Positions 10,541 through 39,913 of a DNA stretch of 64,000 nt are shown piece after piece. The stretch lies in IMG/VR virus record IMGVR_UViG_3300030085_002431, positions 1-64,000 of that record. One strand, given 5' to 3'. Numbering within the stretch: position 1 is the first letter of the stretch; each line of letters starts with the position of its first letter. The position numbers and the translations under genes were made by a program. Under the pieces are notes generated by a model. That model was not told the DNA's origin and ran no database searches. It saw only the letters and a list, made by a program, of their open reading frames with translations.

Positions 10541-13465
10541 ATGGCAAAGTTAGGGATAAATACTGGTTCCACTCCAAATGATGGTACTGGTGACTCATTA
10601 TTAAGTGGTGCTATTAAAGTTAATTCCAATTTTGATGAAATTTACTCCGCATTAGGAGATGGTTCTACCATAACCAACTCTATTGACTTTGCGGTTATTG
10701 CTGGTTATTCTACAGCATCTGGTATTGCTACCTACGCATCAAATGCTGGTATTGCAACTCTTGCTAATTATGCTACAAGTGCTGGTATTGCTACCAATGC
10801 TTCTACTGCAACTTATGCAGTAAATGCTGGGTTTTCGACTGGAGCAGCAACTGCTGATGGATTAGCAGGTACACCAAACATTACAGTTGGTTTTGTAACT
10901 GCGTCGTACCTTTCTGGAGATGGTGGGAATATAACTGGTATCGTAACTAATCTTACTGCTGGGAATGGTATCTCACTATCAAACAATGGTGGTACAGTTA
11001 ATGTAACTAATAATAAATCGGATGATTATCCATCAAAATGGGTTCAGACTGGCTCTGGAATCCATACAATGGCTAATGTTGGAATTGGAACCACAACTCC
11101 ACTAGCAGATCTACATATTAACAGTTCTCAAGTAAAACTAACTGATAGTAGTTCTATAAATTTAGATGATAATAATGCAATTCATTTTGGTTCAAGTGGT
11201 TCTGGTGACTCTTCACTGTTCTGGGATGGTACAGATTTAATACTAGAGGCATCAACAGGCAAATTTACTGTTAAAGACTCGACTAATAAGATATTTGAAG
11301 CAGTTGGTGGAGAAGGACCAATATTATATTATGACGGAGTTGAAAAACTTCAAGTACAATCAAATACTGTTTCATTTACTTCTGATGTTAATGTTACTGG
11401 TGACATCTATACATCTGGTGTTTGTACTGCAGTTTCTTTTTCTGGACATGGTTCTAATTTAACTGGTATTGTTACATCAATTGTTGCTGGAACAAATGTA
11501 ACTGTAACAAACAATTTTGGAACTTATACCATCAATTCTAGTGGTGGTGCTGTTAGTACTCTTACTGGTCTTACTGATGTAACTCTTACATCTCCTTCTA
11601 ATGGTGATGTTCTAAAATATGATGGTAATGGTTGGATTAACGATACTACTGCTGGTACTTATGGTGATTCTAATGTAGATACACATCTGAATGTTAGTGG
11701 CGCACTTACGGGGCAAATATTAAGTTGGAACGGTTCTGATTATGCCTGGGTAACAGACCAGACTGGTGGAGGTAGTTCATATGCAAACTCTGATGTTGAC
11801 ACACATCTAAATGTTAGTGGTGCTACTTCAGGTCAAATTTTAAGTTGGAATGGTTCGGATTATGCTTGGGTAGCAGACCAGACTGGTGGGGGAGGTTCTT
11901 CAACTCCAGAAATTACATGGACTTTGACAGCAAATGGTTCATCACATTATCAATTTGCTGGTGATGGATTTCCAACTGCTCAAAATGACCCTACATTATA
12001 TCTTGTAAGAGGACAAACTTATAAGTTTGTTAATAATACTGGTGCTCATCCATTTAGAATCCAATCTACTACTGCGGCAACAGGTGGTGGTACACAATAT
12101 AACAGTGGTGTAACAAATCAAGATGCGGGTAATGGGGTTACCTTAACATTTGTCGTGCCAATGGATGCACCTGATACATTGTATTATCAGTGTACATCAC
12201 ACACGTCGATGTTTGGAACAATTAATATTCTGTCAACTAGTAGTGGTGGTGGTTCATATGCAAACTCTGATGTTGACACACATCTGAATGTCAGTGGTGC
12301 ATCCACTGGTGAAATCCTTAGTTGGAATGGTTCTGATTATGCCTGGGTAGCAGACCAGACTGGTGCTTCCTATGCTAATTCGGATGTAGACACGCATTTG
12401 AATGTCAGTGGTGCTACATCAGGTCAAATCCTCATCTGGAATGGTTCTGATTATGATTGGGTATCAGAGGCTGGTATTACGACTTCAAGGATAAATGCTA
12501 ATACTCTGAATGTTACTGGTGTTGTTACTGCCACATCTTTCAATGGTAATCTAGATGCTTCCGATCTTGCTTCTGGAACTATACCTGATGCTAGATTCCC
12601 AGCAACACTTCCAACAGCATCTGGTGCTAATTTAACCAATCTCCCTTCATCACAATTAACAGGTGCCCTTCCTGCTATTGATGGTTCAGCACTTACTAAT
12701 TTACCATCATCTGGAACTCCATCTTACACTGATGTTCAGGTTGTATATGAGTTAACCAGTAATTCTAGTAGTTCAAATGGGTGGAGGATTAATGGAAACG
12801 CATTTACTAATACTACTGATAATCCAGACATATACTTAGTAAGAGGACAAAAATATCGATTCATCAATAATTCGGGTGGTTCGCATCCATTCCGTATACA
12901 AGACTCTGCGACATCAGCATACAACGCAGGTGTAACGAACAATGGAGCAACATCAGGTAACATTGATTTTATCCCCCAAAATGGTGCTCCAACACTATTA
13001 TACTATAATTGCACCAATCATAGTGGTATGCTTGGTAAAATTTATATTATTGGAGAACCAGGAAGAACAGTAAAAAATGCAGAAACTGCATCCATTGCAC
13101 AGGGAGCTTATGATGATATAACAATCCCAACAACAGGTAAAACATTTGCTTTACTTAAGATTCTGATCGGTGACCCTGCATGGGTAATATTGTATACAGA
13201 TGCGGCAAGTAGAACAGCTGATGCTGCAGGGACTGTAAATGGTAGAGCAGAGGGAACAGATCCAGCACCTGGTTCAGGTGTATTGGCAGAAGTGAGTAGC
13301 ACATCTTCGGGTTCGACTACATTTAAAATGACACCAGGATTGATTGGTTGGAATGATGACAGCACACCTGCTGCACAGGTTTATGCAAGAGTTTACAATA
13401 AGAGAGCAACAGCAGGTTCTAACACGGTTCTTGTAGCACTTACAACTGTTAATATAGAGGCATAA
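10541..13465 (+). CDS. mosaic tail-fibre/baseplate-attached fibre protein with two cupredoxin-like domains
   Basis: N-terminal GINTGSTPNDGTGDSLLSGAIKVNSNFDEIY anchor motif; GDGxxLTGIV fibre repeats; four 36-aa repeats; two HPF...CxxHxxM domains. Confidence 0.8.
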   Translation: MAKLGINTGSTPNDGTGDSLLSGAIKVNSNFDEIYSALGDGSTITNSIDFAVIAGYSTASGIATYASNAGIATLANYATSAGIATNASTATYAVNAGFSTGAATADGLAGTPNITVGFVTASYLSGDGGNITGIVTNLTAGNGISLSNNGGTVNVTNNKSDDYPSKWVQTGSGIHTMANVGIGTTTPLADLHINSSQVKLTDSSSINLDDNNAIHFGSSGSGDSSLFWDGTDLILEASTGKFTVKDSTNKIFEAVGGEGPILYYDGVEKLQVQSNTVSFTSDVNVTGDIYTSGVCTAVSFSGHGSNLTGIVTSIVAGTNVTVTNNFGTYTINSSGGAVSTLTGLTDVTLTSPSNGDVLKYDGNGWINDTTAGTYGDSNVDTHLNVSGALTGQILSWNGSDYAWVTDQTGGGSSYANSDVDTHLNVSGATSGQILSWNGSDYAWVADQTGGGGSSTPEITWTLTANGSSHYQFAGDGFPTAQNDPTLYLVRGQTYKFVNNTGAHPFRIQSTTAATGGGTQYNSGVTNQDAGNGVTLTFVVPMDAPDTLYYQCTSHTSMFGTINILSTSSGGGSYANSDVDTHLNVSGASTGEILSWNGSDYAWVADQTGASYANSDVDTHLNVSGATSGQILIWNGSDYDWVSEAGITTSRINANTLNVTGVVTATSFNGNLDASDLASGTIPDARFPATLPTASGANLTNLPSSQLTGALPAIDGSALTNLPSSGTPSYTDVQVVYELTSNSSSSNGWRINGNAFTNTTDNPDIYLVRGQKYRFINNSGGSHPFRIQDSATSAYNAGVTNNGATSGNIDFIPQNGAPTLLYYNCTNHSGMLGKIYIIGEPGRTVKNAETASIAQGAYDDITIPTTGKTFALLKILIGDPAWVILYTDAASRTADAAGTVNGRAEGTDPAPGSGVLAEVSSTSSGSTTFKMTPGLIGWNDDSTPAAQVYARVYNKRATAGSNTVLVALTTVNIEA
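11660..12475 (+). repeat. four coding repeats of about 108 nt (YxxSxVDTHLNVSGAxxGxILxWNGSDYxWV)
   Basis: Copies at 11660-11767, 11780-11887, 12257-12364 and 12371-12475. Confidence 0.92.
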
Positions 13466-16257
13466 TGGCAATTTTATTAGTTAACGTAAAACTAAGAGAC
13501 GGAGTTGACCAAAACTCATTTGTCAGTGAATTTGACTCCGTGTCAGAAGTAACTGTAAAAAATTTATTACCAAATATTCCAAATCTTGTTGTTTTTAATG
13601 TTGAGGAATCATATTTAAGTACACTTAAATCACACCCTTCTGTTGATTTCGCAGAAGAAGAAGAAACGTCATTTCCTGCCGTCACGTATCCATCTCTACC
13701 ATCTGTATATACAATATCTAATAAAACAGTATCTAGTAATAGTTTTATTGGAATAAATGGTAGTAAAGATGGAACAGATTATATTTCGTATCAACACTAT
13801 CTTGATACCGATATAATGCAGGAATTGGGCAACCTTAAAGTAGGTAATGCAGATTCTTCAATATATACAAAAATTGGTCTCAAGAGTTGGACTCATACAC
13901 ATAATGCACCAATACTGTTTACCCAAGCATTAGATGATTCCACAGGTAATTATAATCAACCACAGTGGTTACAAGATTACTATGATGATATTGTAGCAAT
14001 TCCATCTAATGCTACAGCAACTCTCACAACAGTTGCTACTGGTGGACACAATGCATTTGTAAATTCAAATGCAGATGGTGCTACCCTTCAGGCAGCAATT
14101 AGAAATTTTGTAGGTTCAACTAATCCATCTGGAACTATTACAAACAGTCAGATTGGTATTGCTCCTTCAGCAGGTCAAACTTATACTGTAGATGGTACAT
14201 CATATCCAGTTATGGGTAAATTATATGTGCCTACTGGTCTAGCATCCAGTCAAATTGATGTTGTAGTTGTATTTCATGGAACTCAATCTGATGGTGCATC
14301 TGGGGACACCATTGCAACTGCAGCATTTAATATGCTTGACAGATTTGTAGATAATACTGTCACAGACCTCAATATAAGAGATAAGATTGTTTTTTCTGTT
14401 GCATATCCTCAGGATAATATCTCTAACGCAAGAAATTTAAGTGTATCTGGTACTGGTACAGAGACATCAACATTCTTAATGGGAGATAACCTTCCGTATG
14501 CTAGAGCAGCAGTTGGTTGGGTCAAAAACTCTTTGAATAGTTTTATGTCGTCAAACAGCATTAGTAAAACTATTGGAGATGTTTATCTATTTGGTCACTC
14601 TCAAGGTGGTAAACTTGTCAGTAAAATTAACACCTTAGATACTGGCATTGCTGGTGTAATTGCAAATGCACCTGGTCCTATTGAGTTTGAACTAACTTGC
14701 TCAGTAGCAGGAGGATACAGCTGCAATAAAATTGCTGCAATTCATGGCACTGCTACCGCTATTGGTAGGTCTACTTATGATGAAATCACTTCATACCCAA
14801 GTCAAACTTATTCCAGTAGATATACGGGCAAATACGTAGACATTGTTACATTAGAGGGTGGAGGTGGTTTCACTGGAACTACATATCAAGGATATCAAGA
14901 TACTCACCCTGATTTTGATGACCCAGATAATACAGGAACTACAAGATGTGTTCCAATGGATTGGAATGGTTGCTCAGAGACATACAACACTCAAGTGACT
15001 CCCAATAACATGTTTGCTGCTCATGCTATAGGAACTTTGAGTACTGCTGGTGGATTGAATTCTGGATTTGCTAAAAAAGCAAAGCTTTATGCAGCGTATA
15101 CACAAGAAGGTTTAGCAACGGCATGTAATGCTATTATTCATTTTCACAATAATAAGAGTGTAAATTCAACAACAGGACTTAAAGACCCTACAATTGTAAT
15201 CGGTGAGTTTCAATATTTGCGAGATACATTTCAGGGTATAAAAGTTGATGAAATTGCCTCTATTACAGATCCTACTGGAGGGACAACAAATAGACCAGTT
15301 AGTGGATGGGGTTCTGATTTTACTCCATTTACAAGCAGAAATATTTTTCCATATCAAGTACAAGACCCCGATGATAGTTCATGGCACTGGATGGTTACCT
15401 TCCCTGACCAATCTCAATCTAGTGTCGTAAAAACTGCAATCGATTCTCTTTATGATAATGGAATTATTTTCATAACTGCTGCAGGTAACAATGGAGGAAC
15501 ATACGTTAAAGAGAGTGATTCTAGATGGAGTGGAACATATTGTACGACAGACTCAACTTACAAAAGCTATGGTATAACTTATAATAATGGTGTAGCATCT
15601 CCTACTAATGTTTCTGGTGCTAGTAATTGGTTTCCATTTAGAGCTTATGGTCCTCATGGTTTAGATAAGGGAATAGATGTTGCTGCAGGGCAAAATAGTG
15701 AAACTCTTGGTATGATTGAAGGATATAGTAATAGAGGACCAGGTATTGATATTGTTGGAAGAGGAGCAAATACATTTTCTGCCAAGCCAACCAACACCGA
15801 TACTAATGGAAAACAATGGGGAGACTTTTCTGGAACAAGTTGTGCTGCACCAACAGTTGCTGGTAAAGCAGCATGTATGATGGAGGAGTATTATACTCTT
15901 CATGGTGCTTGGCCTAACTTTGCACAAGTTAAAAACATGTTGCAAACTGAGGCAAGAAATGGAAATAATCGTATTATTGATCCAGAATCTACAACTTGGT
16001 CAAATGTTCCAGCAGCATCAAGTAGTAGTATTGAAATCAAGAGTCAATCGGAATATCCGAATGCTGATGCACTTCTTCGTATTCAATCATCAGGAACTAG
16101 TGGAAATGGTGGTTTCCAATTCGCAGAACTTGCGGGTACTCCCAAGTTTTTTGCTTTCTTGGATACAAGAGGGTATTCGAGAGAACAAACCAATGGTAGG
16201 AGACCTACATCAGGTGTGATGTATCCCAGACCAAGGAACGTTAGTGATGTGGAATAA
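13465..16257 (+). CDS. subtilisin-family (S8) protease with N-terminal prodomain and inserted alpha/beta-hydrolase
   Basis: Prodomain ending LKSHPSVDFAEEE; TGKYVDIVTLE; HAIGTLSTAGG (H520); AAGNNG; FSGTSCAAPTVAG (S792). The insert carries VVFHG and FGHSQGG. Confidence 0.85.
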   Translation: MAILLVNVKLRDGVDQNSFVSEFDSVSEVTVKNLLPNIPNLVVFNVEESYLSTLKSHPSVDFAEEEETSFPAVTYPSLPSVYTISNKTVSSNSFIGINGSKDGTDYISYQHYLDTDIMQELGNLKVGNADSSIYTKIGLKSWTHTHNAPILFTQALDDSTGNYNQPQWLQDYYDDIVAIPSNATATLTTVATGGHNAFVNSNADGATLQAAIRNFVGSTNPSGTITNSQIGIAPSAGQTYTVDGTSYPVMGKLYVPTGLASSQIDVVVVFHGTQSDGASGDTIATAAFNMLDRFVDNTVTDLNIRDKIVFSVAYPQDNISNARNLSVSGTGTETSTFLMGDNLPYARAAVGWVKNSLNSFMSSNSISKTIGDVYLFGHSQGGKLVSKINTLDTGIAGVIANAPGPIEFELTCSVAGGYSCNKIAAIHGTATAIGRSTYDEITSYPSQTYSSRYTGKYVDIVTLEGGGGFTGTTYQGYQDTHPDFDDPDNTGTTRCVPMDWNGCSETYNTQVTPNNMFAAHAIGTLSTAGGLNSGFAKKAKLYAAYTQEGLATACNAIIHFHNNKSVNSTTGLKDPTIVIGEFQYLRDTFQGIKVDEIASITDPTGGTTNRPVSGWGSDFTPFTSRNIFPYQVQDPDDSSWHWMVTFPDQSQSSVVKTAIDSLYDNGIIFITAAGNNGGTYVKESDSRWSGTYCTTDSTYKSYGITYNNGVASPTNVSGASNWFPFRAYGPHGLDKGIDVAAGQNSETLGMIEGYSNRGPGIDIVGRGANTFSAKPTNTDTNGKQWGDFSGTSCAAPTVAGKAACMMEEYYTLHGAWPNFAQVKNMLQTEARNGNNRIIDPESTTWSNVPAASSSSIEIKSQSEYPNADALLRIQSSGTSGNGGFQFAELAGTPKFFAFLDTRGYSREQTNGRRPTSGVMYPRPRNVSDVE

Positions 16258-16260
16258 ATA
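16253..16260 (+). promoter_or_regulatory. T4-type late promoter (AATAAATA)
   Basis: Overlaps the stop codon of the preceding gene, 38 nt before ATG 16299. Confidence 0.55.
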
Positions 16261-16298
16261 TTCCTTATGAGAGTACTAGTCAATAAAGAGCAAAATAA

Positions 16299-21776: not shown

Positions 21777-21791
21777 CTATAACATTTATCC

Positions 21792-21799: not shown

Positions 21800-21820
21800 A
21801 AAGAAAAGTATCCAAGTAAA

Positions 21821-23386
21821 ATGCCTGCTATAATTACTGAGCAATTCAGAGTGATGAATGCCGAAACTTTTGTAAACAGTTTAGTTTCGGTGGGTAACAC
21901 TGCTAACATTTATTATACTTTTATTGGTCAACCAAATAGCTTGGATTCTCAAGCTGGTGGTTCTCCCAATTGGGGAACAGGACCTTCACCGTTAGACGGA
22001 TTTGAAGAGGAAAATGCTATAAAAGAAACTATTCTTGCAATGAAGAAGGTGACAAAGCAAGATGTTAGAAGAATGGTTCGTAAGGTAAGCTGGGTTTCTG
22101 GTTCTACCTATGAAATGTATCGTCATGACTACAACATCTATAGTCAGACTCCAGTAACAAATCAACCAAATCTTTATTCCTCAAATTTTTATGTCATTAA
22201 TGAGGATTTCCGAGTTTATGCTTGTTTGCAAAATGGTACTGACCCAGAGAATCCTAAGGGTAGACCATCTTTTGATCAACCAAGTTTTGTAGACTTAGAA
22301 CCAAGACCAGCAGGAACGAGTGGTGATGGTTATATTTGGAAGTACTTATTTACAGTAAAACCATCAGAGATTGTAAAATTTGACTCTATTGAATTTATTC
22401 CTGTTCCTGAAGATTGGGGAACGACAGGAGAATCCATCTCTACAAAAAATAATGCTGTAGATGGTAAGGTAGAAATTATTACTATTACCAGTAGAGGTAT
22501 TGGATATCAACCAATTTCAAAATCATTCACCAATATTCCTATTTTAGGTGATGGTGAGGGAGGAAAAGCAACCATTACTGTTGATTCTTTTGGTAAAGTT
22601 TCTGAAGTATTTGTTACTGATGGTGGTAAAGGATATACCAAAGGAATTATTGAATTCCAACCAGGTGCTCCTGGAATTCCATCTGAGCTATCAAACTCTG
22701 GTTCACTAGCAACGTTTGATGTAATTATTCCACCAAAAGGTGGTCATGGATATGATATTTACAGAGAACTTGGTGCATATAGGGTTCTAGTTTATTCTCG
22801 TTATCAAACAGATGAGTCAAATCCAGATATTATCTTAGGTAATGATTTTGCTAGAGTTGGAATTATAAAGAATCCAATGATTCTTGGTAGTGATACAGAG
22901 AAACTCACCACTGGTGAAGTAAGTGCTCTAAATTCTTTAAGATTGACAGGAGTTACCACACAAACAACTTACCCAGTAGATTCTATTATTACTCAAACTA
23001 CTGGTTTGGGTGTAACTGCTATTGGTTATGTTGCTTCTTGGGATGATGTTACTGGTGTATTGAAGTATTATCAACCAGTAGGATTAGCAACAGCTGGTGT
23101 AAATTATAAAATCAATAAGTTTACATCCACACCCTCTGGTGGTGGTTCTTTCAGTATAAATTGCCCTAAGATTGTAGGTCCAGCACTCAGCATAGATACT
23201 GACTTTACGGGTATTAGCACTGTAATAAATAATAGGACATATCAGTTGGGCAGCAACTTTGTGGCTGGAATTTCGTCAGCAGAGTATAACAAAAAATCTG
23301 GTGAAATAATCTATATCGATAATAGAAAAGCAATTCCAAGGTCCACAAGCCAAAAAGAAGATATTAAAATCGTACTGGAGTTCTAA
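21821..23386 (+). CDS. gp8: baseplate wedge subunit, T4 gp8-like
   Basis: MPAIITEQFRVMNAETFV, VRKVSWVSGSTYEMYRHDY, GDGYIWKYLFTVKP, SGEIIYIDNRKAIPRSTSQKEDIKIVLEF. Confidence 0.93.
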   Translation: MPAIITEQFRVMNAETFVNSLVSVGNTANIYYTFIGQPNSLDSQAGGSPNWGTGPSPLDGFEEENAIKETILAMKKVTKQDVRRMVRKVSWVSGSTYEMYRHDYNIYSQTPVTNQPNLYSSNFYVINEDFRVYACLQNGTDPENPKGRPSFDQPSFVDLEPRPAGTSGDGYIWKYLFTVKPSEIVKFDSIEFIPVPEDWGTTGESISTKNNAVDGKVEIITITSRGIGYQPISKSFTNIPILGDGEGGKATITVDSFGKVSEVFVTDGGKGYTKGIIEFQPGAPGIPSELSNSGSLATFDVIIPPKGGHGYDIYRELGAYRVLVYSRYQTDESNPDIILGNDFARVGIIKNPMILGSDTEKLTTGEVSALNSLRLTGVTTQTTYPVDSIITQTTGLGVTAIGYVASWDDVTGVLKYYQPVGLATAGVNYKINKFTSTPSGGGSFSINCPKIVGPALSIDTDFTGISTVINNRTYQLGSNFVAGISSAEYNKKSGEIIYIDNRKAIPRSTSQKEDIKIVLEF

Positions 23387-23392
23387 AGTCAA

Positions 23393-31131: not shown

Positions 31132-31146
31132 AAAGTACTTTTTGCT

Positions 31147-32192: not shown

Positions 32193-32209
32193 CACCACTT
32201 ATTAAACAT

Positions 32210-32217
32210 TATAAATA
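32210..32217 (+). promoter_or_regulatory. T4 late promoter, perfect consensus TATAAATA
   Basis: Intergenic, upstream of GGAG RBS and ATG 32263. Confidence 0.85.
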
Positions 32218-32262
32218 AATCTAGAAAGCATTCCAATAAACGTAAGATAGGAGACTTTATCA

Positions 32263-33645
32263 ATGGCACTTTTAGTACCAGATTGTGGCGAACTTCAATC
32301 CCTAAGGTATCTCGTTAACAGTGATCACAGAATCCCTAGGAATCTGATTCTAAAACTATATTCTAGTTCAACGACACCTGCGGAAGGTGATGTTCCTTCA
32401 CAGACAACTTATTATGAACCATACGATGCATCGGGTTCACTTGGATATGGTGTTTCACCATCCAATGGATATCCTGGTGTAATTAACAACAGATGGGACC
32501 AGGATTATTCCAGACAGTTCGGTATTCTCCTCAATGGTAATCTTTGGAATGTAAGAACGATTACTACTGCAATCGCAACTCCTACTGGTTCTGGTACAGT
32601 TAACGAGTATACAATCACTGTTGATAGCACAACCAACATTGCTGTTGGTCACTATGTAAGTGGTGGTGGTGTTGGTTCCAACGCAACCGTTGCTGCAATC
32701 GATGGTAACACAATCGTCCTAACTGTTCCTAATACATCTACGTTTACCAACCAAGCACTAGAGTTCGGTGTTGGTACAACCACTGCATCCTATCCTGAGC
32801 AAACTTTCACCTTCTCCTCTGCTGCTAATAACCAGTTCGGTTACTACCTAGTAAGAGCAAACAACCTTCCTAAGGAAATCCACGGTGTTGAGAATGCTAC
32901 TTCCATTGCTGAAGCAGTTGCTATCGGTAAGACTCTGACCACTGGTACTATTGGTCAGTCATATGTAACTCTCTTCGATAAGAAGTACGAGCCAACCATT
33001 ACTGGTACAGCAGGAAACTACGAACTGGCAGTTAACGTCAATACTGGCATCACAACTAACCAGAGAGTTGTTGGAACAGGTATTCCAGCAGGAACCAGAG
33101 TTACAGGTGTAACTGGAACTACTATCTACCTAAACAAGGCACTATCAGGTGCTGCTTCTGGTGTCGGTACATTCTACGAAAACGTCGGTGAAGACATCTG
33201 CGTAGGTATGGCAGTTACCCACAGCAATGTACAGGGTGAAGTTAATGCGATTCCTGCAGGAACTAAAGTTACTGGTTTCGATGAAATTGAGAGAATTGTA
33301 TATCTCAACAAAGAACTAGTCAACAACGTACAGACTGCTACGGGTGACCAAGTAAACTTCGGATTCTCCCAAGTTACTGCTACTTCTCACGGTCTTGCTG
33401 AAGGTGATGTAATTTACATCGCATCTGGTGCAGGTAACACCACAACAGAATCTTCAACATACACTGTATTCAAGTCACTAGACGCAAATACGTTCTCAAC
33501 TGTTCCAGCATTGGCAGTTGGTGCAGGTGGAAGTTCTACACTCTACAGCAGCATCATGTTTGCTGAAAGATTTACAAACGGTCCATACAATATCCAAAAC
33601 AACGGTGACCAAATTAAGGTTACCCTGAACATCAGCCTCGACTGA
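32263..33645 (+). CDS. virion structural protein, probably abundant
   Basis: Own late promoter, RBS and terminator; Thr/Gly/Val-rich; C-ending codons (AAC, ATC, TTC, TAC) are visibly enriched. Confidence 0.8.
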   Translation: MALLVPDCGELQSLRYLVNSDHRIPRNLILKLYSSSTTPAEGDVPSQTTYYEPYDASGSLGYGVSPSNGYPGVINNRWDQDYSRQFGILLNGNLWNVRTITTAIATPTGSGTVNEYTITVDSTTNIAVGHYVSGGGVGSNATVAAIDGNTIVLTVPNTSTFTNQALEFGVGTTTASYPEQTFTFSSAANNQFGYYLVRANNLPKEIHGVENATSIAEAVAIGKTLTTGTIGQSYVTLFDKKYEPTITGTAGNYELAVNVNTGITTNQRVVGTGIPAGTRVTGVTGTTIYLNKALSGAASGVGTFYENVGEDICVGMAVTHSNVQGEVNAIPAGTKVTGFDEIERIVYLNKELVNNVQTATGDQVNFGFSQVTATSHGLAEGDVIYIASGAGNTTTESSTYTVFKSLDANTFSTVPALAVGAGGSSTLYSSIMFAERFTNGPYNIQNNGDQIKVTLNISLD

Positions 33646-33675
33646 TACATTTTACTTGATTTCATACTATATCAT

Positions 33676-33707
33676 GGAGGGGTTGCGGAATCGTGGCCCC
33701 TCCTTTT
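33676..33707 (+). terminator. Rho-independent terminator
   Basis: GGAGGGG 33676-33682 pairs with CCCCTCC 33697-33703, followed by TTTT, 30 nt after the stop codon. Confidence 0.85.
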
Positions 33708-33734
33708 CCTTGTTTTCAATAAAGAGAATGCGAG

Positions 33735-36011
33735 ATGCCAGCACTTAATGTAGGAATAAATTCAACATTTGAGCAGCAGAGAGTTGTCATTAATACTCTT
33801 GCTGTTGATGTAAACTCAATTTTAACTGGTAATGCAGGTTTATCAACCTACGCACCAGTTTCTGGAGTTTCTAGTGATACGGTACGCTTTAATGGGCAAT
33901 TACCTAGTTATTATTTAAATTATGCAAATTTAGGTAATAAACCAACAAGTTTATCCCAGTTTACCAATGATATAGGTTTTGTTACTAGTGGATATTTTGC
34001 CAGTTTAAGTGTTTTATCAATTGGCGGTACAATTACAGCACAGAATGTTGTTAGTTCATTAACTGGAACTGCATCTACTGCACTAAAAATTCCTATTGCA
34101 GAGTCTGGGGATAATGACGCAAACTATGATATTCCATTTATAAATGGTACGTATACATCAAATGGTGACCACGATTTACAGGTAGATAGTGGAGCCCTAA
34201 GATTTAATCCTGGAACAAATACATTATCAGCAAACGCAATCGTAGCAAATGTAATTTCTGGGCAACTAACAGGAAATGCGACGGGACTTAGTGGAAACCC
34301 ATCAATAACTGTTCAGAACGTAACTGCAGCTGGAAATGTTAATGGTACATTTATTGGAGATTTAACAGGTAATGTTACTGGCAACCTAACAGGTAATGTT
34401 ACTGGAAGTCTTACAGGCACTGCTTCTAGTGCAACAATAGCTCAATCAATTTATGAGCATTCTGATGTTATCACTAGTGGTATTGTTAGTGCAACATCAT
34501 ATTTTGGAGATGGTTCCAACTTAACTGGTATTGTTGCTTCTGGTACTGGACTAAGAGTTGAAGAAGAGGGTGCATATGTTGGTGCTGCAACCACTGTAAA
34601 TTTTGTTGGTTCTGCGGTAACAGCATCTCTTGTTGGGTCAATAATTGAAGTTGCAATTACCGATACCGACACTGTTCATTGGACAGAATCTACTAACAAT
34701 CAGTTATATCGTCTAAGTGAAGTTGCTATCGGAACTACACAAACCTTAAATGGTAGTCAAGCAACTATTGGTAATGTAGGAGCATCTGGAACAACACTAT
34801 TTGTACAAGGAAATACACAAACAACTGAGACATTTATTGGAAGAGATATAGAACTTGGTCCATATGGTGTTTCTCCAAATATATCTCTCGGTGGTAATGC
34901 AGGAAACGCATCATTTAGTGGTGATGTTTCAGGAAGAGATTTTACTGCATCTAGAAATTTAGTATCCACCTCAGGTCTACGTGTAGGAGTATCTGGTACA
35001 TCCATATATTCTATTGGTGGACAGACTGGATTCAATCTAATTTCACCATCGTATTTGGTTGATATCAATGGTGACCTTGGTGTTAGAGGTCCATCTTATT
35101 TTACAGACCACATACATCTTTCTGATAATAACCAAATCAGAATTGGTGATAATACCGATTTGAGGATTTATCATGATACCACCAATACGCACATTGCTGA
35201 ACAAGGCCAGGGAAGTCTGATTGTCCGTGGTTCAACTGTCGATATTAAAAACGACGCAGATACACAAAATATTGCTAAGTTTAGTAGTGGTGCTGGAGTT
35301 AAATTATATTATTCAAATTCAGAGAAATTTGAAACTCTTGGTACTGGTTCAACCACATATGGTGAACACTTTGCAACAAAGTTTATTGGAGACGGTTCTG
35401 GATTAACCAACATTACAGCATCTGCTACAGGTGGTGTAACCATCCAAAATAGTGGTTCTAATGTTGGAACTGCGGTAACACTTAACTTTACTGGAAGTAG
35501 TGTTAGTTCTTCTGTATCCAATGGAATTGCAAATATTACCGTATCTGGAGGTGGGGGAAGTGGAGTTGGGTACTTTGATAACAATCAAACACTCCCAGGT
35601 ATTCATACAACTGCAGCAAACGTAGGACTAGGAACAACAAATCCAAGAACTCCTTTACAGGTTGGAAAATCCTATGGTGTATGGAGTGAGTGTGGTTCAT
35701 TTGCTTCTAGTGCAGGAGTTGCTAAAACAACCATTGGTGGTTGGTCACTTTCTGATACAGACTTTAAAACTGCAGAATTTACCCTATACTTCAATTTTGA
35801 AGATGGTAGAATCCAAAGTCAAAAAGCATTAGCAATGAATGATGGTGTAAATGCGTACATCTCCCAATATGCAATTATGAATACTGGTTCAAACTTAATG
35901 ATTATTGATGCATCTATATCAAATAATGAATTCATACTTTCATTAACACCAGAAGCTGGAGTTACTGGTCTTATGACATACATAGTTACTAGGGAGACTA
36001 CGAAGTTATGA
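33735..36011 (+). CDS. tail-fibre-like protein
   Basis: MPALNVGINSTFEQQRVVINTLAVDV start; GNLTGNVTG repeats; GDGSxLTGI; NVGLGTTNPRTPLQV. Confidence 0.8.
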   Translation: MPALNVGINSTFEQQRVVINTLAVDVNSILTGNAGLSTYAPVSGVSSDTVRFNGQLPSYYLNYANLGNKPTSLSQFTNDIGFVTSGYFASLSVLSIGGTITAQNVVSSLTGTASTALKIPIAESGDNDANYDIPFINGTYTSNGDHDLQVDSGALRFNPGTNTLSANAIVANVISGQLTGNATGLSGNPSITVQNVTAAGNVNGTFIGDLTGNVTGNLTGNVTGSLTGTASSATIAQSIYEHSDVITSGIVSATSYFGDGSNLTGIVASGTGLRVEEEGAYVGAATTVNFVGSAVTASLVGSIIEVAITDTDTVHWTESTNNQLYRLSEVAIGTTQTLNGSQATIGNVGASGTTLFVQGNTQTTETFIGRDIELGPYGVSPNISLGGNAGNASFSGDVSGRDFTASRNLVSTSGLRVGVSGTSIYSIGGQTGFNLISPSYLVDINGDLGVRGPSYFTDHIHLSDNNQIRIGDNTDLRIYHDTTNTHIAEQGQGSLIVRGSTVDIKNDADTQNIAKFSSGAGVKLYYSNSEKFETLGTGSTTYGEHFATKFIGDGSGLTNITASATGGVTIQNSGSNVGTAVTLNFTGSSVSSSVSNGIANITVSGGGGSGVGYFDNNQTLPGIHTTAANVGLGTTNPRTPLQVGKSYGVWSECGSFASSAGVAKTTIGGWSLSDTDFKTAEFTLYFNFEDGRIQSQKALAMNDGVNAYISQYAIMNTGSNLMIIDASISNNEFILSLTPEAGVTGLMTYIVTRETTKL

Positions 36012-38539
36012 ATAACGAGGAGTTAACACACGAGCAGAAGAAGCAGAAAATTATTGATGCTTATGAAGCAGCTAGGGCAAATGGTGAGCAGGAACCAGAT
36101 GCAAGTCCTACTACTAAAAAGGAATTTATTGTTGGTTGCTATACCGCAGAGGATTGGGTAGAAATTCATGCTCTTTTGACCTCAGAGGATACATCCGAAG
36201 ACAATGTTCCTTCAGAGAGTATTCCATGCTGCAATGAGATATTGCATAGCCCTAAAAGAGGAATATATTCATTAACAGACCCAGAAGCAGAGGCATTGAG
36301 GGATCATCCAAAAGTAGAGTATGTAAATGTTAACGCAGCAAAATATCCTGGAACATTCGCAGTCAATCCACTTGAAGTTACTGAATTAAATCTTACAGAT
36401 GGAAGATTTTATCGTTATGACAATACCGTAAAGCACCAGAAAGCAATTTCTACTAGTGGCATCAGACCAACTAACCCTGGTGTAGACCTTTTAAATAGAG
36501 GAAGTTGGCAGTTACACAGACATACACAGGCTGTAGACCCATGGTTGAGTGCTTCAAGTACAAGTTCAATTATTGAAACTAGGCATCAACAACTTGGTGA
36601 CGGTAGTGATGTTGATATTATTGTGTGTGACCAAGATATGTGGTTTGGTCATATTGAATTTCAAAATAATTTAGAAACAGGTCCAACAAGATATAGAGGA
36701 GGAAATGTACTTCCAGGAAATGGAACGTGTGATATTCTCGATTTAATCCTTGATGCTCCGTATTACCTAGACCCTGATTTTTTTGATGCAGATCCAGCAC
36801 AGAGATTGATGACTCGTTGGGATGGGACAATAGTTCCAACAGAGACAGCAGCACATAATTGGTGGGAAAATAATAGTACTACATATCGTTCTTCAAAGTT
36901 TGTAAGTCAAAGCCAGGGTGGAAGTGCTAGTGGAGTTTTTGACTTTGGTCAAATAATGATTGAATCTGGTTACACCAGAGCAAATAGTAATGGTAGTAAT
37001 ACTTCATATCATACTGGATCTGGATACCATGGTACTCCATGTGCTTCTCAGTCATATGGTAGGCAATATGGATGGGCATTTAATGCTAATAAGTGGTTTT
37101 TGAATCTTTATGGTTCAAATTCCCATAGTTTTGAGGTTGGTTTCGATTTACAGAAAGTTTTCCATAATTGCAAACCAATTAATCCTACGTATGGAACAAA
37201 AGATCCAACAATTTCTAGTAATAGTTGGAGTAATAGATTCACACCAGCATCTAGTGGATATTATTGGCATAGACCTGCAACAATTGATGGTACTACTAAT
37301 GGAGTTTCATATTCCAGTAAACCAGCATTTATGAATAATTATAATTCTAATACTAGAGCAGCACCTTATGCTCCAAACTCCGTTCTTACTGCTGGAGAAG
37401 AGATGATTGATGCTGGAGTAATTTTTGTATGTGCTGCAGGTAACAGACATCAATTGAATGTTCCTAGTGACGATGTAGATTTCAACAACTATGATGGATC
37501 ATCATCCAATGTTTCATTAGAAAATTCCAAATCAACTTCTTATTATGGTAATGGAATGTATGGGTTAGAGTATTATAGAACTCATAATAGAATTGGATTC
37601 CCAGGACAAATTGGAGTTCAAACTTCCACAACACCATGGACTTACAGAACAATTAATGTTGGTGCTCTAGATGATTTACATAGTAATAACAAAGAAAGAT
37701 TAGTATATTATACCAATCGAGGTCCAGGAGTAGATGTATATGCTACGTCTGACTATTCTCTTGCTGCTAGTGATGACAATTATCCAGGAACAATAACAAA
37801 TCGTTATGATAAGTATTACACCATCGATGGCACTCAATCTGTAGAATCTAGAGATTGTTTGTTTAATGGTACAAGTTCTGCATGTCCAATCTTTGTTGGT
37901 CTTTTAGCAACTAAAGTTCAGTATAATAGAAGTTGGACTTATGCTGATTGTAAAACTTGGATTAATTCAATTACTCCACAGTCAACCAGTGATTTTAATT
38001 ACATAGCACGTCCAGACACACCAACTCATTCCAACTGGTCAGTACAGAATTCTGCTTGGGAACCTTCCAATACACTAATTGTGGCATGGGATAAACCAAC
38101 AGGAAACGAACCTGGGGTTACTTTTGAGCAAGACTTCCTGAATACACCAACACCAAATCTCCCCTCAGTTATTGAAGGAACTACCCTTAGTGTCAGTATT
38201 ACCACTGATGCTTCAGATGGAACTTATTATTACTCATGTGAAAAGGATGATTTTGGGTCAAATATTGAAGGAAATGATTTCCAAAGTCTATCATTGACTG
38301 GAAGTTTCACCATTTCATCTGGAACTGGAACAGTAAATATTCCCATCAAATCTGGAATTCTTAGCAATAACCAAACAGAATCTTTTAGATTCCGAATTCG
38401 CACAGGTTCTACTACTGGACCAGTTGTTGCGACATCTCAAGATTTCCAAATTACAGATGCACCAGAACCAAATCCATTTGTATTTGCAACAGGTGAAGGT
38501 TTGAGTTTCAGCGGAAGCATCAGTATTCGTTTTGAGTAA
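36008..38539 (+). CDS. subtilisin-family (S8) protease with prodomain and C-terminal beta-sandwich
   Basis: Complete triad: VDIIVCDQD (D at 36629), YHGTPCAS (H at 37028), AAGN, FNGTSSACP (S at 37874); prodomain ending LRDHPKVEYV. Confidence 0.88.
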   Translation: MNNEELTHEQKKQKIIDAYEAARANGEQEPDASPTTKKEFIVGCYTAEDWVEIHALLTSEDTSEDNVPSESIPCCNEILHSPKRGIYSLTDPEAEALRDHPKVEYVNVNAAKYPGTFAVNPLEVTELNLTDGRFYRYDNTVKHQKAISTSGIRPTNPGVDLLNRGSWQLHRHTQAVDPWLSASSTSSIIETRHQQLGDGSDVDIIVCDQDMWFGHIEFQNNLETGPTRYRGGNVLPGNGTCDILDLILDAPYYLDPDFFDADPAQRLMTRWDGTIVPTETAAHNWWENNSTTYRSSKFVSQSQGGSASGVFDFGQIMIESGYTRANSNGSNTSYHTGSGYHGTPCASQSYGRQYGWAFNANKWFLNLYGSNSHSFEVGFDLQKVFHNCKPINPTYGTKDPTISSNSWSNRFTPASSGYYWHRPATIDGTTNGVSYSSKPAFMNNYNSNTRAAPYAPNSVLTAGEEMIDAGVIFVCAAGNRHQLNVPSDDVDFNNYDGSSSNVSLENSKSTSYYGNGMYGLEYYRTHNRIGFPGQIGVQTSTTPWTYRTINVGALDDLHSNNKERLVYYTNRGPGVDVYATSDYSLAASDDNYPGTITNRYDKYYTIDGTQSVESRDCLFNGTSSACPIFVGLLATKVQYNRSWTYADCKTWINSITPQSTSDFNYIARPDTPTHSNWSVQNSAWEPSNTLIVAWDKPTGNEPGVTFEQDFLNTPTPNLPSVIEGTTLSVSITTDASDGTYYYSCEKDDFGSNIEGNDFQSLSLTGSFTISSGTGTVNIPIKSGILSNNQTESFRFRIRTGSTTGPVVATSQDFQITDAPEPNPFVFATGEGLSFSGSISIRFE

Positions 38540-38546
38540 ATAAATA
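38539..38546 (+). promoter_or_regulatory. T4-type late promoter (AATAAATA)
   Basis: 17 nt upstream of ATG 38564. Confidence 0.7.
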
Positions 38547-38563
38547 GTTAAAAAGTATCTCTG

Positions 38564-39913
38564 ATGGCTAATAAAGGATTCGGTATAAGAGAACTAACAC
38601 TTATTGAAGGTGCTGGAACTCCGAAATTATCAGTACCTCAAAATTTAGATATTGATGCAGTAGTTGTAGGTATCAGCACTGGACTGGTTGTTGGTGGTGC
38701 TGTGACTATTGCTGGACCTCTTGGAGTAGCAACTATAACATCAACGGGTCGAATCACTGCAACAGAAATTAATGCAGAGTATTATTTTACCGAGTCTGCT
38801 GATAATAATTCCGATTATAATATCCCATTCATGGGAGATGCTACTGGTGGTAATAGTTATTCAGCTCTTCAGGTTGACAATAGTGTATTACAATTCAATC
38901 CTGGCACTAATATACTTAAAACCAATAACCTAGAGGCTTTTGGGTATATTGATGCTGGTAATGGATACATAGGTGATGGTTCACAATTAACAGGAATTGT
39001 TACTTCTGTTGTTGCTGGTAGTGACGTTACAGTTTCACAAACAGGTGGAACAGTAACTATTAATTCAACATCTGGTGTTGGATCGGATGCAAGTGTTAAT
39101 ACAACAGGAATTATTACTGCAGCATCTTTTGATTCAACTGGATTTGGTGCTGCAACGATTCGTGTAGCAGTTGGAAATACACTAAACATTGAAGCTCCAA
39201 TTGTTGCTGTTTCTACTGATATGACAGTAGGTGGTTTAGCAACTATACCTAATTTAAGTGTACCAACACTTGCTGATTTGCCAGTAATTGGACCTGGATT
39301 AGGACAAACAACAAGACTTAATGCAAATCAGGTAGCAATTTCAACTAACTGTAGTATTGGTAATGACCTTACCATTGGAGGAAATATAGGTCTAACTGGA
39401 AATATCAATTCAAATGGTGGAACACTGAATATAAATGCCAATGATTTCCGTGTATTTAATAGTGCAGGAACTGTCAAGAAATTTGATGTCACTAATAGTA
39501 GTGGAATTGTTGCAGACGCAGATTTTGATATCAATGGTCAACTAACAGCCAATTCATATAGAACAGCAACTACGGTAGGTGATGGTCAAGATTTGAGTTA
39601 TGGAATAGTTTATAGCATTGCTGCAAATTCTGGTCAATATCGTATATCTGGTCCAGGTGTTGTAAATACTGTTGATGACCCAACATTATACTTACATAGA
39701 GGATTTACATATGTCTTCGTAAACACAGCTGGTGGTAGTCACCCATTCCGCATCCAGTATACAGGAACAAGCACTGGATATGGCAGTACCTATCTAAGTG
39801 GCAACCAAAGTGGCACACAGGTCTTTACAGTGCCCTTTGATGCTCCATCTACTCTTGAATATGAATGTGTATACCATAGCACCATGAAGGGTAGTCTAAT
39901 TATTCCTACTTGA
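38564..39913 (+). CDS. fibre-like protein with C-terminal cupredoxin-like domain
   Basis: GDGSQLTGIVTS and VNTTGIITA fibre motifs; C-terminal DPTLYLHRGFTYVF...SHPFRIQ...LEYECVYHSTMKG. Confidence 0.8.
   Translation: MANKGFGIRELTLIEGAGTPKLSVPQNLDIDAVVVGISTGLVVGGAVTIAGPLGVATITSTGRITATEINAEYYFTESADNNSDYNIPFMGDATGGNSYSALQVDNSVLQFNPGTNILKTNNLEAFGYIDAGNGYIGDGSQLTGIVTSVVAGSDVTVSQTGGTVTINSTSGVGSDASVNTTGIITAASFDSTGFGAATIRVAVGNTLNIEAPIVAVSTDMTVGGLATIPNLSVPTLADLPVIGPGLGQTTRLNANQVAISTNCSIGNDLTIGGNIGLTGNINSNGGTLNINANDFRVFNSAGTVKKFDVTNSSGIVADADFDINGQLTANSYRTATTVGDGQDLSYGIVYSIAANSGQYRISGPGVVNTVDDPTLYLHRGFTYVFVNTAGGSHPFRIQYTGTSTGYGSTYLSGNQSGTQVFTVPFDAPSTLEYECVYHSTMKGSLIIPT

What the first reader, a model, noticed from the sequence alone, without database searches (positions are those of the whole stretch)
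11900..39913. Three type-1-copper-like ligand sets on virion fibre proteins
Seen: three related domains, each with an upstream HPF and a C-x2-H-x2-M loop: CTSHTSM (12191-12211), CTNHSGM (13010-13030) and CVYHSTM (39866-39886). Established: blue-copper cupredoxins bind Cu through His, Cys, His and Met, and C-x2-H-x2-M is the amicyanin spacing (plastocyanin is C-x2-H-x4-M). Inference: the virion may display Cu-binding or redox domains for metal-dependent receptor binding, copper scavenging or fibre stabilisation. All four ligands are kept in three diverged copies, which argues for function.
Basis: partly seen in the sequence, partly recalled or inferred. Interest (0 to 1): 0.6.

Follow-up and report, generated by a model that had tools for sequence, protein, structure and literature searches.

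The report
Blue-copper-type domains on cyanophage baseplate fibres
Two tail/baseplate proteins of this large marine cyanophage carry three copies of a plastocyanin-like (cupredoxin) domain whose four copper-binding residues are kept across thousands of related phage proteins. This suggests the virus particle displays copper sites, a feature for which I found no published description.

Summary
The three motifs CTSHTSM, CTNHSGM and CVYHSTM are the only C-x2-H-x2-M strings in any of the six frames. They sit at the same position in three homologous domains of about 105 residues. Two domains lie in a 974-aa gp9-like baseplate/fibre protein (10541-13465) and one at the C-terminus of a 449-aa paralogue (38564-39913).

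AlphaFold models of two of the domains (pLDDT 88 and 84) match only cupredoxins in the PDB (Z 10.6-11.0, rmsd 2.0-2.3 A). Profile searches hit amicyanin and nitrite-reductase cupredoxin domains. The four residues align with the ligands of the phage's own plastocyanin.

The family is large: 8,627 representative clusters and 321 cyanophage records. All four ligands are kept in 142 of 143 close copies and 194 of 214 distant copies. When ligands are lost they are mostly lost several at once, as expected for a working metal site.

The S-SM1 orthologue (gp9, T4-GC398) was detected in virions by mass spectrometry.

Copper binding itself, the 3D ligand geometry and the function are not shown. My best reading is a Cu-loaded, metal-locked module on baseplate fibres facing the host. 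Redox sensing is the more exciting rival.

Verdict: a real feature, a new variant of a known kind, and apparently undescribed apart from stray 'PetE/plastocyanin' auto-annotations.

The parts
10541..13465 (+). P0001, 974 aa. It is the positional orthologue of cyanophage 'gp9' (T4-GC398), enlarged into a fibre. Order of parts: gp9/10-type N-terminal domain, repeats, cupredoxin A, repeats, cupredoxin B, C-terminal tip domain.
   Evidence: ORF list and translation. PHROG 677 'baseplate wedge tail fiber connector', 1.7e-85. Gene order gp6 - giant gp7-like - this gene - ... - gp8 matches S-SM1 and RB11-B.
10556..10801 (+). T4 gp9/gp10-type N-terminal (baseplate-anchoring) domain, aa 6-87 of P0001.
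   Evidence: Pfam PF07880, 29.8 bits against a cut-off of 25.
11654..11893 (+). Two copies of a repeat of about 38 aa (..SxVDTHLNVSGAxxGQILSWNGSDYAWVxDQTGGG) upstream of domain A.
   Evidence: Translation and motif search.
11903..12241 (+). Cupredoxin domain A (aa 455-567). Putative ligands: His503 (12047-12049), Cys551 (12191-12193), His554 (12200-12202), Met557 (12209-12211).
   Evidence: HMM. AF2 model pLDDT 83.8. The Foldseek-free PDB search returned only cupredoxin-fold proteins in the top 50; the best was the N-terminal cupredoxin domain of H. denitrificans nitrite reductase, Z 11.0, rmsd 2.0 A over 96 residues. Pfam Copper-bind 17.6 bits, below the cut-off.
12251..12484 (+). Two more copies of the same ~38-aa repeat, between domains A and B.
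12722..13066 (+). Cupredoxin domain B (aa 728-842). Putative ligands: His782 (12884-12886), Cys824 (13010-13012), His827 (13019-13021), Met830 (13028-13030).
   Evidence: HMM 108-184 bits. Profile A3 8e-40. Its nearest relative in the tree is domain A. Not modelled separately.
13064..13462 (+). C-terminal domain of P0001 (aa 842-974). A virus-only domain of unknown function, found at the ends of collagen-like, gp9/10-N and other fibre proteins. Probably the fibre tip.
   Evidence: PHROG 9627 and 15343. Atlas structure matches TM 0.89-0.94, all viral.
38564..39913 (+). P0002, 449 aa. A fibre-like N-terminal and middle part (similar to ORF 33735-36011 and to P0001 aa 270-337), with cupredoxin domain C as its C-terminal end.
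39575..39910 (+). Cupredoxin domain C (aa 338-449). Putative ligands: His393 (39740-39742), Cys435 (39866-39868), His438 (39875-39877), Met441 (39884-39886).
   Evidence: AF2 model pLDDT 88.1, pTM 0.81. In Foldseek against the PDB the top hits are nearly all copper proteins of the cupredoxin fold, plus cupredoxin-fold coagulation factors V/VIII. VIA Z 10.6, rmsd 2.3 A over 93 residues. hhalign to the phage's own PetE puts H/C/H/M on H/C/H/M.
13465..16257 (+). Neighbouring subtilase-domain structural gene (930 aa). Its start overlaps the stop of P0001. Its relation to the cupredoxin genes is unknown, but the pairing recurs in other phages.
   Evidence: Pfam Peptidase_S8 3.7e-13. D392/H427/S792 motifs present.
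36008..38539 (+). Second subtilase-domain gene (843 aa), directly upstream of P0002.
   Evidence: Pfam Peptidase_S8 2.3e-11. The same gene pair occurs in S-SSM7 and S-SCSM2R.

Best explanation
The three segments are true cupredoxin (plastocyanin/amicyanin-fold) domains. Each carries an intact, selectively maintained type-1 ('blue') copper ligand set: His on the fourth strand, and Cys-x2-His-x2-Met in the last loop.

They are built into structural proteins that plug into the baseplate through a T4 gp9/gp10-type N-terminal domain. They belong to a very large phage family in which the domain sits either at the C-terminal end of a short baseplate protein (cyanophage 'gp9') or as one to nine beads inside longer fibres.

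What I think happens (inferred, not shown): each domain holds one copper ion. The metal ties the C-terminal loop to the beta-sandwich core and makes a rigid, oxidation-proof knob. That knob is a host-facing part of the baseplate fibres.

The domains are not the phage's photosynthetic plastocyanin. That gene, petE, has a signal peptide and lies elsewhere in the genome.
For: Fold:
- Two AF2 models (pLDDT 88.1 and 83.8).
- Foldseek top hits are cupredoxin-fold proteins such as rusticyanin, amicyanin, plastocyanin and nitrite reductase.
- VIA Z 10.6 and 11.0 at rmsd 2.3 and 2.0 A. The second search did not depend on Foldseek.

Sequence:
- The family profile hits cupredoxin domains of nitrite reductases (2.6e-4) and amicyanin (1.4e-3) in the PDB.
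- 16 of 29 members give sub-threshold Pfam Copper-bind hits.

Ligand positions:
- MAFFT and hhalign place the four residues on the ligands of the phage's own PetE.
- The spacing F-x-N-x5-H is ungapped against both PetE and amicyanin.

Selection:
- 142 of 143 unique close copies keep all four ligands. The single exception lost three at once.
- Among 214 copies from 136 cluster representatives at 50% identity, 194 keep all four and 3 have Met replaced by Phe. From memory, Phe is a known axial variant of type-1 sites.
- The number of ligands changed per copy is 0:194, 1:4, 2:4, 3:7, 4:5.
- The four ligand columns are among the nine most conserved of 103.
- A still more divergent copy in ACG-2014d keeps all four ligands, while the corresponding domain in S-SM1 has none of them.

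Rarity of the residues:
- P0002 has only 2 Cys, 3 His and 4 Met in total.
- Each domain has a single Cys, so it cannot form an intradomain disulfide.

Virion location:
- Pfam T4_gp9_10_N and PHROG 677, and synteny.
- S-SM1 gp9 (T4-GC398), which ends in this domain, was detected in purified virions with 25 peptide counts (PMC3037559 Table S8).
Against: - No metal was measured.
- No copy reaches Pfam's Copper-bind gathering score (17.6, 14.1 and 16.8 bits against 21.2).
- The residue after the first His is Pro in 141 of 143 copies. From memory, classical cupredoxins have a conserved Asn there that stabilises the site.
- The proteins have no signal peptide, so they fold in the cytoplasm, where free copper is scarce. 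From memory, cupredoxins made in bacterial cytoplasm often pick up zinc.
- About 9% of copies have lost the site and presumably still fold, so the metal is not essential to the fold.
- Tandem arrays of up to nine copies look like spacer use rather than specific binding.
- No redox or binding partner is known.
Confidence: 0.55

Rival explanations
1. Redox or electron-transfer module. The copper site is loaded and redox-active. Its oxidation state, set by the host's surroundings (light-driven reductants, superoxide, pH), changes the ligand loop and so gates adsorption or baseplate triggering. Alternatively it passes electrons to or from a host surface component.
For: From established knowledge, type-1 sites are known almost only as electron-transfer centres. 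The thioether Met ligand, kept in 143 of 143 close and about 97% of distant copies, is typical of copper rather than of a purely structural metal. From memory, the short amicyanin-type loop is the one in which the C-terminal His most readily comes off Cu(I). In the phage collection the domain is found only in cyanophage records (321), not in the 11 non-cyanophage records that share gp8.
Against: No partner, no expression data and no redox data. Tandem internal copies and ligand-less copies fit a structural role better. About 30% of cyanophage-labelled records with gp8 show no detectable copy.
Confidence: 0.17
2. The ligand set binds another metal (most likely Zn) picked up in the cytoplasm, and serves only as a structural clamp. 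No copper chemistry is involved.
For: The proteins have no signal peptide and assemble in the cytoplasm, unlike the phage's PetE, which has one. From memory, recombinant cupredoxins often come out Zn-loaded. Also from memory, phage fibres are known to hold structural Zn or Fe (T4 gp12, gp37).
Against: Met is a poor zinc ligand, yet it is the best-kept of the four. The Met-to-Phe variant is a copper-site variant. From memory, type-1 sites have femtomolar or better copper affinity, so virions could load copper from seawater after lysis.
Confidence: 0.15
3. Metal-free adhesion or spacer module. The cupredoxin sandwich is used like an Ig or CBM domain, and the four residues are kept for packing reasons or are a slowly decaying relic.
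For: 20 of 214 copies lack an intact set and persist. The domain appears in many architectures, as ordinary fibre modules do.
Against: A relic would decay one residue at a time. Here the changes are all-or-none, and the four columns are among the most conserved at more than 1 substitution per site of divergence. A lone unpaired Cys on an extracellular protein is hard to keep without a ligand role.
Confidence: 0.08
4. The domains are copies of the photosynthesis gene petE (plastocyanin), captured from the host and fused to structural genes. On this view they are misplaced auxiliary metabolic genes, as the 'PetE' and 'plastocyanin' annotations of some homologues imply.
For: One isolate record calls its homologue PetE and JGI names two homologues 'plastocyanin'. 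The ligands align with PetE.
Against: The family profile does not find the phage's own PetE at E <= 1, and hhalign gives only 23% probability. The loop length differs: x2 here against x4 in PetE. There is no signal peptide. The best PDB relatives are nitrite-reductase and amicyanin-type domains, not plastocyanin. The family has thousands of members fused to fibre parts.
Confidence: 0.03

Closest known systems
Amicyanin (type-1 copper cupredoxin of methylotrophs; PDB 1AAC and mutants)
   Same: Same fold. Same ligand set and the same short loop C-x2-H-x2-M. The loop context is similar (Y-x-C-T-x-H-x-x-M-x-G). It is the best full-domain sequence match in the PDB (E 1.4e-3 over profile positions 31-106).
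   Different: Amicyanin is a free periplasmic electron carrier with a defined partner (methylamine dehydrogenase). Here the domain is fused into virion proteins, has Pro rather than Asn after the first His, and has no known partner. The structural match is only moderate (Z 6.5).
N-terminal extra cupredoxin domain of the three-domain copper nitrite reductase of Hyphomicrobium denitrificans (PDB 2DV6, 6TFD)
   Same: Best structural match for both models (Z 10.6 and 11.0, rmsd 2.3 and 2.0 A, 93-96 residues, 20-23% identity). Like the phage domain, it is a cupredoxin module fused to a larger protein.
   Different: It feeds electrons to a catalytic enzyme. The phage proteins have no type-2 or trinuclear sites: no HxH motifs.
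Cyanophage/cyanobacterial plastocyanin PetE (auxiliary metabolic gene)
   Same: Cupredoxin with His/Cys/His/Met. It is encoded in the same genome (160545-160799).
   Different: PetE is a free 107-aa protein with a signal peptide and the loop C-x2-H-x4-M. It scores 75 bits on Pfam Copper-bind. The structural domains score 14-18 bits and are not found by each other's profile.
T4 gp9 (baseplate wedge, long-tail-fibre connector)
   Same: The N-terminal domain is homologous (Pfam PF07880). The gene sits in the same place in the baseplate cluster. An orthologue is present in virions.
   Different: Only the N-terminal domain matches. The remainder of the cyanophage protein is different and ends in the cupredoxin. 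So 'gp9' is a positional label, not evidence of the same job.
Metal sites in phage fibres and spikes (from memory: Zn in T4 gp12, Fe in the T4 gp37 tip and in P2/phi92 spike tips)
   Same: Metal ions held by His-rich sites in host-contacting tail parts.
   Different: Those sites lie on the threefold axis between chains of a trimer. Here the site would lie within one chain of a classical redox-protein fold, with Cys and Met ligands.

Membership tests
Cupredoxin fold (Greek-key beta-sandwich) | A seven- or eight-stranded beta-sandwich that superposes on solved cupredoxins. | tested here: met
   Models of domains C and A. The top PDB matches are cupredoxin-fold proteins: Z 10.6 and 11.0, rmsd 2.3 and 2.0 A over 93-96 residues.
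Type-1 (blue) copper site | His on the strand after the 'x-F-x-N' strand, plus Cys, His and Met in the loop between the last two strands. | tested here: met
   Alignments with the phage's own PetE and with amicyanin. Spacings seen: C-x2-H-x2-M (majority), C-x4-H-x2-M, C-x2-H-x3-M, C-x3-H-x2-M and C-x2-H-x4-M.
Type-1 (blue) copper site | The ligand set is conserved as a unit across the family. | tested here: met
   142 of 143 close copies and 194 of 214 distant copies are intact. Losses are mostly of two to four ligands together.
Type-1 (blue) copper site | The four side chains converge within bonding distance of one point. | not testable with these tools
   Structure prediction returns no coordinates and none were placed in /data.
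Type-1 (blue) copper site | Binds one Cu, with a ~600 nm charge-transfer band and small parallel hyperfine splitting in EPR. | not testable with these tools
   This needs the purified protein.
Type-1 (blue) copper site | Asn after the first His, holding the two ligand loops. This is typical of the family, not strictly defining. | tested here: not met
   The residue is Pro in 141 of 143 copies.
Pfam PF00127 Copper-bind (plastocyanin/azurin family) | Score at or above the gathering cut-off of 21.2 bits. | tested here: not met
   17.6 bits (P0001), 14.1 bits (P0002) and 16.8 bits (domain C alone). 16 of 29 members match, with E-values of 8.7e-4 at best. A nine-copy relative reaches 23.5 bits in sum.
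Plastocyanin PetE | A free protein of about 100 aa with a lumen-targeting signal peptide and the loop C-x2-H-x4-M. | tested here: not met
   The domains are fused into 449-aa and 974-aa proteins without signal peptides, and the loop is x2/x2. The real petE is at 160545-160799 of the genome.
T4 gp9 | N-terminal gp9/gp10 domain. | tested here: met
   P0001 scores 29.8 bits on PF07880, above the cut-off of 25. P0002 has no hit.
T4 gp9 | The middle and C-terminal domains of T4 gp9. | tested here: not met
   The Pfam match covers only aa 6-87. The rest consists of repeats, cupredoxins and a different tip domain.
Multicopper oxidase / two-domain laccase | HxH motifs that supply the ligands of the trinuclear copper cluster. 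| tested here: not met
   Neither protein has an HxH.

The most novel reading that the evidence does not exclude
The cyanophage virion carries 20-50 working blue-copper centres on its baseplate. They act as a redox or copper-dependent switch. One version: the particle reads the redox or light state of a photosynthetic host (or of seawater) and commits to adsorption or contraction only then. The other version: it presents bound copper as bait to a host copper-uptake route, a copper counterpart of the 'Ferrojan horse' idea for iron.
Probability: 0.12. Interest if true: 0.9.

Novelty: new variant of a known kind. Interest (0 to 1): 0.62.

Why it matters
If the sites hold copper, T4-like cyanophages, among the most abundant viruses in the ocean, would be metalloprotein particles with a redox-active centre at the host-contact end. 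That would bear on four things:
- How these phages recognise or time infection of photosynthetic hosts.
- How stable the virions are in sunlit, oxidising seawater.
- Trace-metal budgets. Taking T4's 18 copies of gp9 per particle as a guide, this phage could carry tens of copper atoms per virion (inference).
- Annotation practice. Some homologues are already labelled PetE or plastocyanin, so they may be miscounted as photosynthesis genes.

It also defines a large family (thousands of sequence clusters) that Pfam does not capture at threshold.

Tried and rejected
- Near-identical DNA in the phage collection: none found.
- A fourth copy, or a copy with a different loop length, in the window or the genome: none.
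- Multicopper-oxidase reading (two cupredoxin domains in one chain, probably a trimer, as in small laccases): rejected because there are no HxH motifs.
- Origin from petE: rejected.
- Ligand geometry in the models: not possible, because no coordinates were available.
- ESM Atlas structure library: not installed.
- The same scan with the 3-sequence alignment: only three loci, all on marine MAG contigs. Two carry the cyanophage gene order (gp9-like gene followed by a T4-GC399-like gene) and one is a giant ORF with a ligand-less copy. I read these as mis-binned phage DNA. The scan's strict word patterns make this weak evidence that cells lack the family.
- Literature: 'cyanophage + cupredoxin', 'bacteriophage + tail fiber + blue copper', 'cupredoxin + virion + phage' and 'cyanophage + copper-binding' gave nothing on a virion cupredoxin. 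The library lacks most subscription journals, so this is not proof of novelty.
- Not used: complex prediction, because I make no binding claim, and the read-mapping tools. No other genetic code was needed.

Full report
**1. The observation**

They are the only matches to C..H..M in any of the six frames. The composition of the main + strand ORFs predicts 0.021 matches, and the six frames together predict about 2.6. A wider pattern, C-x(2-5)-H-x(2-5)-M, adds only two unrelated strings.

Each motif lies 42-48 residues after [AS]HPFRIQ, within a domain of about 105 residues. The three domains are mutually 39-49% identical. Two of them (A, window 11903-12241; B, 12722-13066) are in ORF 10541-13465 (974 aa, P0001). 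The third (C, 39575-39910) is the C-terminal end of ORF 38564-39913 (449 aa, P0002). HMM and profile searches find exactly three copies in the window and in the whole genome.

**2. The genome and the carrier proteins**

The window is the first 64 kb of a 250,613-bp IMG/VR virus record rated complete. Its GC content is 36.6%. It holds the baseplate and fibre gene cluster of a T4-like cyanomyovirus. By gp8, the nearest isolates are S-SSM7, S-SSM6a, Sf-FS3 and S-SCSM2R, at 68-69% identity.

The gene order is gp6 (834-2723), a 2,594-aa gp7-like giant, P0001, a 930-aa subtilase-domain protein, an 1,825-aa baseplate protein, gp8 (21821-23386) and a 2,511-aa protein. P0001 sits where cyanophages have the gene annotated 'gp9' (T4-GC398), as seen in S-SM1 and RB11-B.

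P0001 consists of:
- A T4 gp9/gp10-type N-terminal domain (Pfam PF07880, 29.8 bits, above the cut-off).
- Four or five copies of a repeat of about 38 aa.
- The two cupredoxin domains.
- A C-terminal domain found only at the ends of viral fibre proteins.

P0002 has a fibre-like body related to ORF 33735-36011 and to part of P0001, and it ends in domain C.

There is direct evidence for virion location in a relative. S-SM1 gp9 (SSM1_103, T4-GC398) ends in this domain. T4-GC398 is listed as detected, with 25 peptide counts, in purified S-SM1 particles (Sullivan et al. 2010, PMC3037559, Suppl. Table 8). For the two proteins of this window, virion location is inferred from homology and synteny.

**3. 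What the domain is**

An AlphaFold2 model of domain C, built with a 29-sequence alignment, has pLDDT 88.1 and pTM 0.81 and is all-beta.
- In Foldseek against the PDB, the top hits are nearly all copper proteins of the cupredoxin fold: rusticyanin, amicyanin, plastocyanin, nitrite-reductase and laccase domains, and AcoP. Two cupredoxin-fold coagulation factors (V/VIII) also appear. All have probability 1.0.
- Re-alignment gives Z 10.6 at rmsd 2.3 A over 93 residues. The best match is the extra N-terminal cupredoxin domain of the Hyphomicrobium denitrificans nitrite reductase.

A separate model of domain A has pLDDT 83.8. It was searched without Foldseek against 48,161 PDB representatives. All of the top 50 are cupredoxin-fold proteins. 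The same domain comes first, at Z 11.0 and rmsd 2.0 A over 96 residues with 23% identity. Domain B was not modelled. It is 41-44% identical to A and C.

At sequence level:
- The family profile finds cupredoxin domains of nitrite reductases (2.6e-4, 3.3e-4) and amicyanin (1.4e-3 and a series of mutants) in the PDB.
- Single domains give weak hits to plastocyanin and nitrite reductase.
- Pfam Copper-bind matches 16 of 29 members, always below its cut-off.

So this is a distinct cupredoxin family that Pfam does not capture.

**4. The ligand set**

MAFFT and hhalign both put the His of HPFRIQ and the Cys, His and Met of the loop on the four ligands of the phage's own plastocyanin. The stretch F-V-N-x5-H aligns without gaps to F-V-N-N-M-L-P-P-H of PetE, and by counting to W-I-N-R-E-A-M-P-H53 of amicyanin. 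HMMER's own amicyanin alignment shifts this His by two residues, so this point rests on the PetE alignments.

Loop lengths vary within the family:
- C-x2-H-x2-M in 295 of 336 intact copies from the two samples combined.
- Also C-x4-H-x2-M, C-x2-H-x3-M, C-x3-H-x2-M and C-x2-H-x4-M.

Such variation is normal among cupredoxins.

**5. Conservation**

- The domain occurs in 321 records of the phage collection, all labelled as cyanophages or marine single-virus amplicons. A gp8 homologue occurs in 474 records, of which 463 carry such labels. None of the 11 non-cyanophage records with gp8 has the domain.
- IMG/VR holds at least 470 stretches.
- The exhaustive profile search of 1.84 billion cluster representatives gives 8,627 proteins at E <= 1e-3, 3,726 at <= 1e-10 and 299 at <= 1e-30, with up to nine copies per protein. 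I ran this costly search because the claims on distribution and on conservation at distance depend on it.
- In 143 unique close copies, 142 keep His/Cys/His/Met. The one exception (L032) has Asp/Ser/Asn/Met, so three ligands are gone together.
- In 214 copies from 136 representatives, 194 are intact and 3 have Phe for Met. From memory, Phe is a known axial variant of type-1 sites. Most of the rest have lost two to four ligands. Ligands changed per copy: 0:194, 1:4, 2:4, 3:7, 4:5.
- The four columns are among the nine most conserved of 103.
- Still more divergent copies lie in the T4-GC399 gene downstream of gp9. In ACG-2014d one such copy keeps all four ligands (AHPLAL ... FCRYHGLMG). The corresponding domain in S-SM1 has none of them (DSQMLL ... 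FAYTSAGLG). Another S-SM1 copy keeps them.

This all-or-none pattern, held at more than one substitution per site, is what a cooperative metal site gives and a decaying relic does not. The residues are also rare in these proteins: P0002 has 2 Cys, 3 His and 4 Met in total.

**6. What it is not**

- It is not the photosynthetic plastocyanin. The genome has a real petE at 160545-160799 (75 bits), with a signal peptide and the x2/x4 loop, followed by what I take, from its position and from memory, to be a PTOX-like ORF. The structural-domain profile does not detect it at E <= 1.
- It is not a multicopper oxidase, because there are no HxH motifs.
- 'gp9' describes only the N-terminal anchor.

**7. 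How it most likely works**

Shown: the fold, the homologous ligand positions, the concerted conservation, the placement in baseplate/fibre proteins, and virion presence of one orthologue.

Inferred: each domain binds one copper ion. Met as the best-kept ligand and the Met-to-Phe variant point to copper rather than zinc. A lone Cys on an extracellular protein needs protection, which metal binding gives.

I commit to a metal-locked, rigid module on baseplate-anchored fibres that face the host. It is terminal in gp9-type proteins and in P0002. It is internal in P0001, where a different domain forms the tip.

Points against:
- The proteins fold in the cytoplasm, without export.
- Pro replaces the usual Asn after the first His.
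- About 9% of copies do without the site.
- Tandem arrays look like spacers.

The rivals, in order, are a redox or electron-transfer switch, a zinc or other-metal clamp, a metal-free module, and a captured petE.

**8. Novelty**

Automatic pipelines have brushed against this. One isolate record calls its homologue 'PetE', and JGI names two homologues 'plastocyanin'. BFVD models of P-SSM2 'proximal tail fiber', of S8/S53-, S74- and YHYH-domain proteins and of S-TIM5 structural proteins show the same fold.

I found no paper that describes a cupredoxin or copper site on a cyanophage virion. The 2005 and 2010 comparative papers discuss gp9 and petE but not this domain. The library is incomplete, so this is absence of evidence only.

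I rate it a new variant of a known kind: a classical redox-protein domain, with its site intact, used as a virion building block.

**9. Operators' notes**

- No read-mapping tool was used.
- No contig looked human.
- Only genetic code 11 was used.

Noticed in passing
window 13465-16257 and 36008-38539; L092 (S-SSM7) 2598-5573; L088 (S-SCSM2R) 1589-4381: Each cupredoxin gene sits next to a subtilase (Peptidase_S8) domain structural gene. The same pairing occurs in S-SSM7 and S-SCSM2R. In ACG-2014e/h the S8/S53 protein itself carries the cupredoxin fold (BFVD). ORF 13465-16257 has D392, H427 and S792 in subtilase-like motifs, so it may be an active protease on the virion. ORF 36008-38539 shows the His and Ser motifs but no clear Asp before them.
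   Followed up: partly
window 2725-10509 (aa 1215-1312); L083 6301-10461; L085 2822-5305: The gp7-like giant protein has a YHYH domain (PF14240, 7e-23). In other cyanophages the T4-GC399 protein downstream of gp9 combines YHYH with divergent cupredoxin-like domains, some with the ligand set and some without.
   Followed up: partly
window 11654-11893 and 12251-12484: P0001 has four to five near-identical repeats of about 38 aa (SYANSDVDTHLNVSGAxSGQILSWNGSDYAWVxDQTGGG) flanking domain A. Their function is unknown. Each has one His.
   Followed up: no
genome G000 160545-160799 (L001 1435-1758) and the next ORF, L001 1758-2261: A true plastocyanin gene petE with a signal peptide, followed by what looks (from memory) like a PTOX-type ORF. 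So the phage encodes both a soluble blue-copper protein and three structural ones.
   Followed up: partly
L088 3875-4381 (S-SCSM2R SSCSM2R_202); P0009, P0104: Homologues of the structural domain are annotated 'PetE' in a GenBank record and 'plastocyanin' by JGI. Counts of petE as an auxiliary metabolic gene may include such structural genes.
   Followed up: partly
L032 2716-3333: One environmental gp9-type copy has Asp/Ser/Asn in place of His/Cys/His, while the rest of the domain is well kept. It is a natural 'site-dead' variant, useful as a control.
   Followed up: no
L094 (MAG Rhodopirellula NAT69), L095 (MAG Rickettsiales MED606), L096 (MAG Verrucomicrobiota DS_MAG62): The only hits in 185,579 prokaryote species genomes are on marine MAG contigs. 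L094 and L095 have the cyanophage gene order, so they are probably phage contigs binned into bacterial MAGs.
   Followed up: partly
L093 8001-10877 (P0123): A 958-aa protein with nine tandem copies of the domain (loop YYKCGxHGGMGG). It lies on a 43-kb contig beside giant RCC1/WD40-repeat proteins, ClpP and NT5C. This is a different kind of phage from the T4-like cyanophages.
   Followed up: no
window 40125-46022: A 1,965-aa ORF with a Reelin subrepeat-B domain (8.5e-15). Several long TTG-started ORFs in other + strand frames lie inside it (42421-43404, 43414-44829, 44860-46035). These are probably a composition effect.
   Followed up: no
L084 (S-SKS1, HQ633071.1) ORF SWZG_00010: The domain, with a slightly longer loop (CTTGGHGGM), also sits inside a 1,727-aa protein of S-SKS1 (genus Llyrvirus). 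That phage is classified outside Kyanoviridae, the family of the T4-like cyanophages.
   Followed up: no
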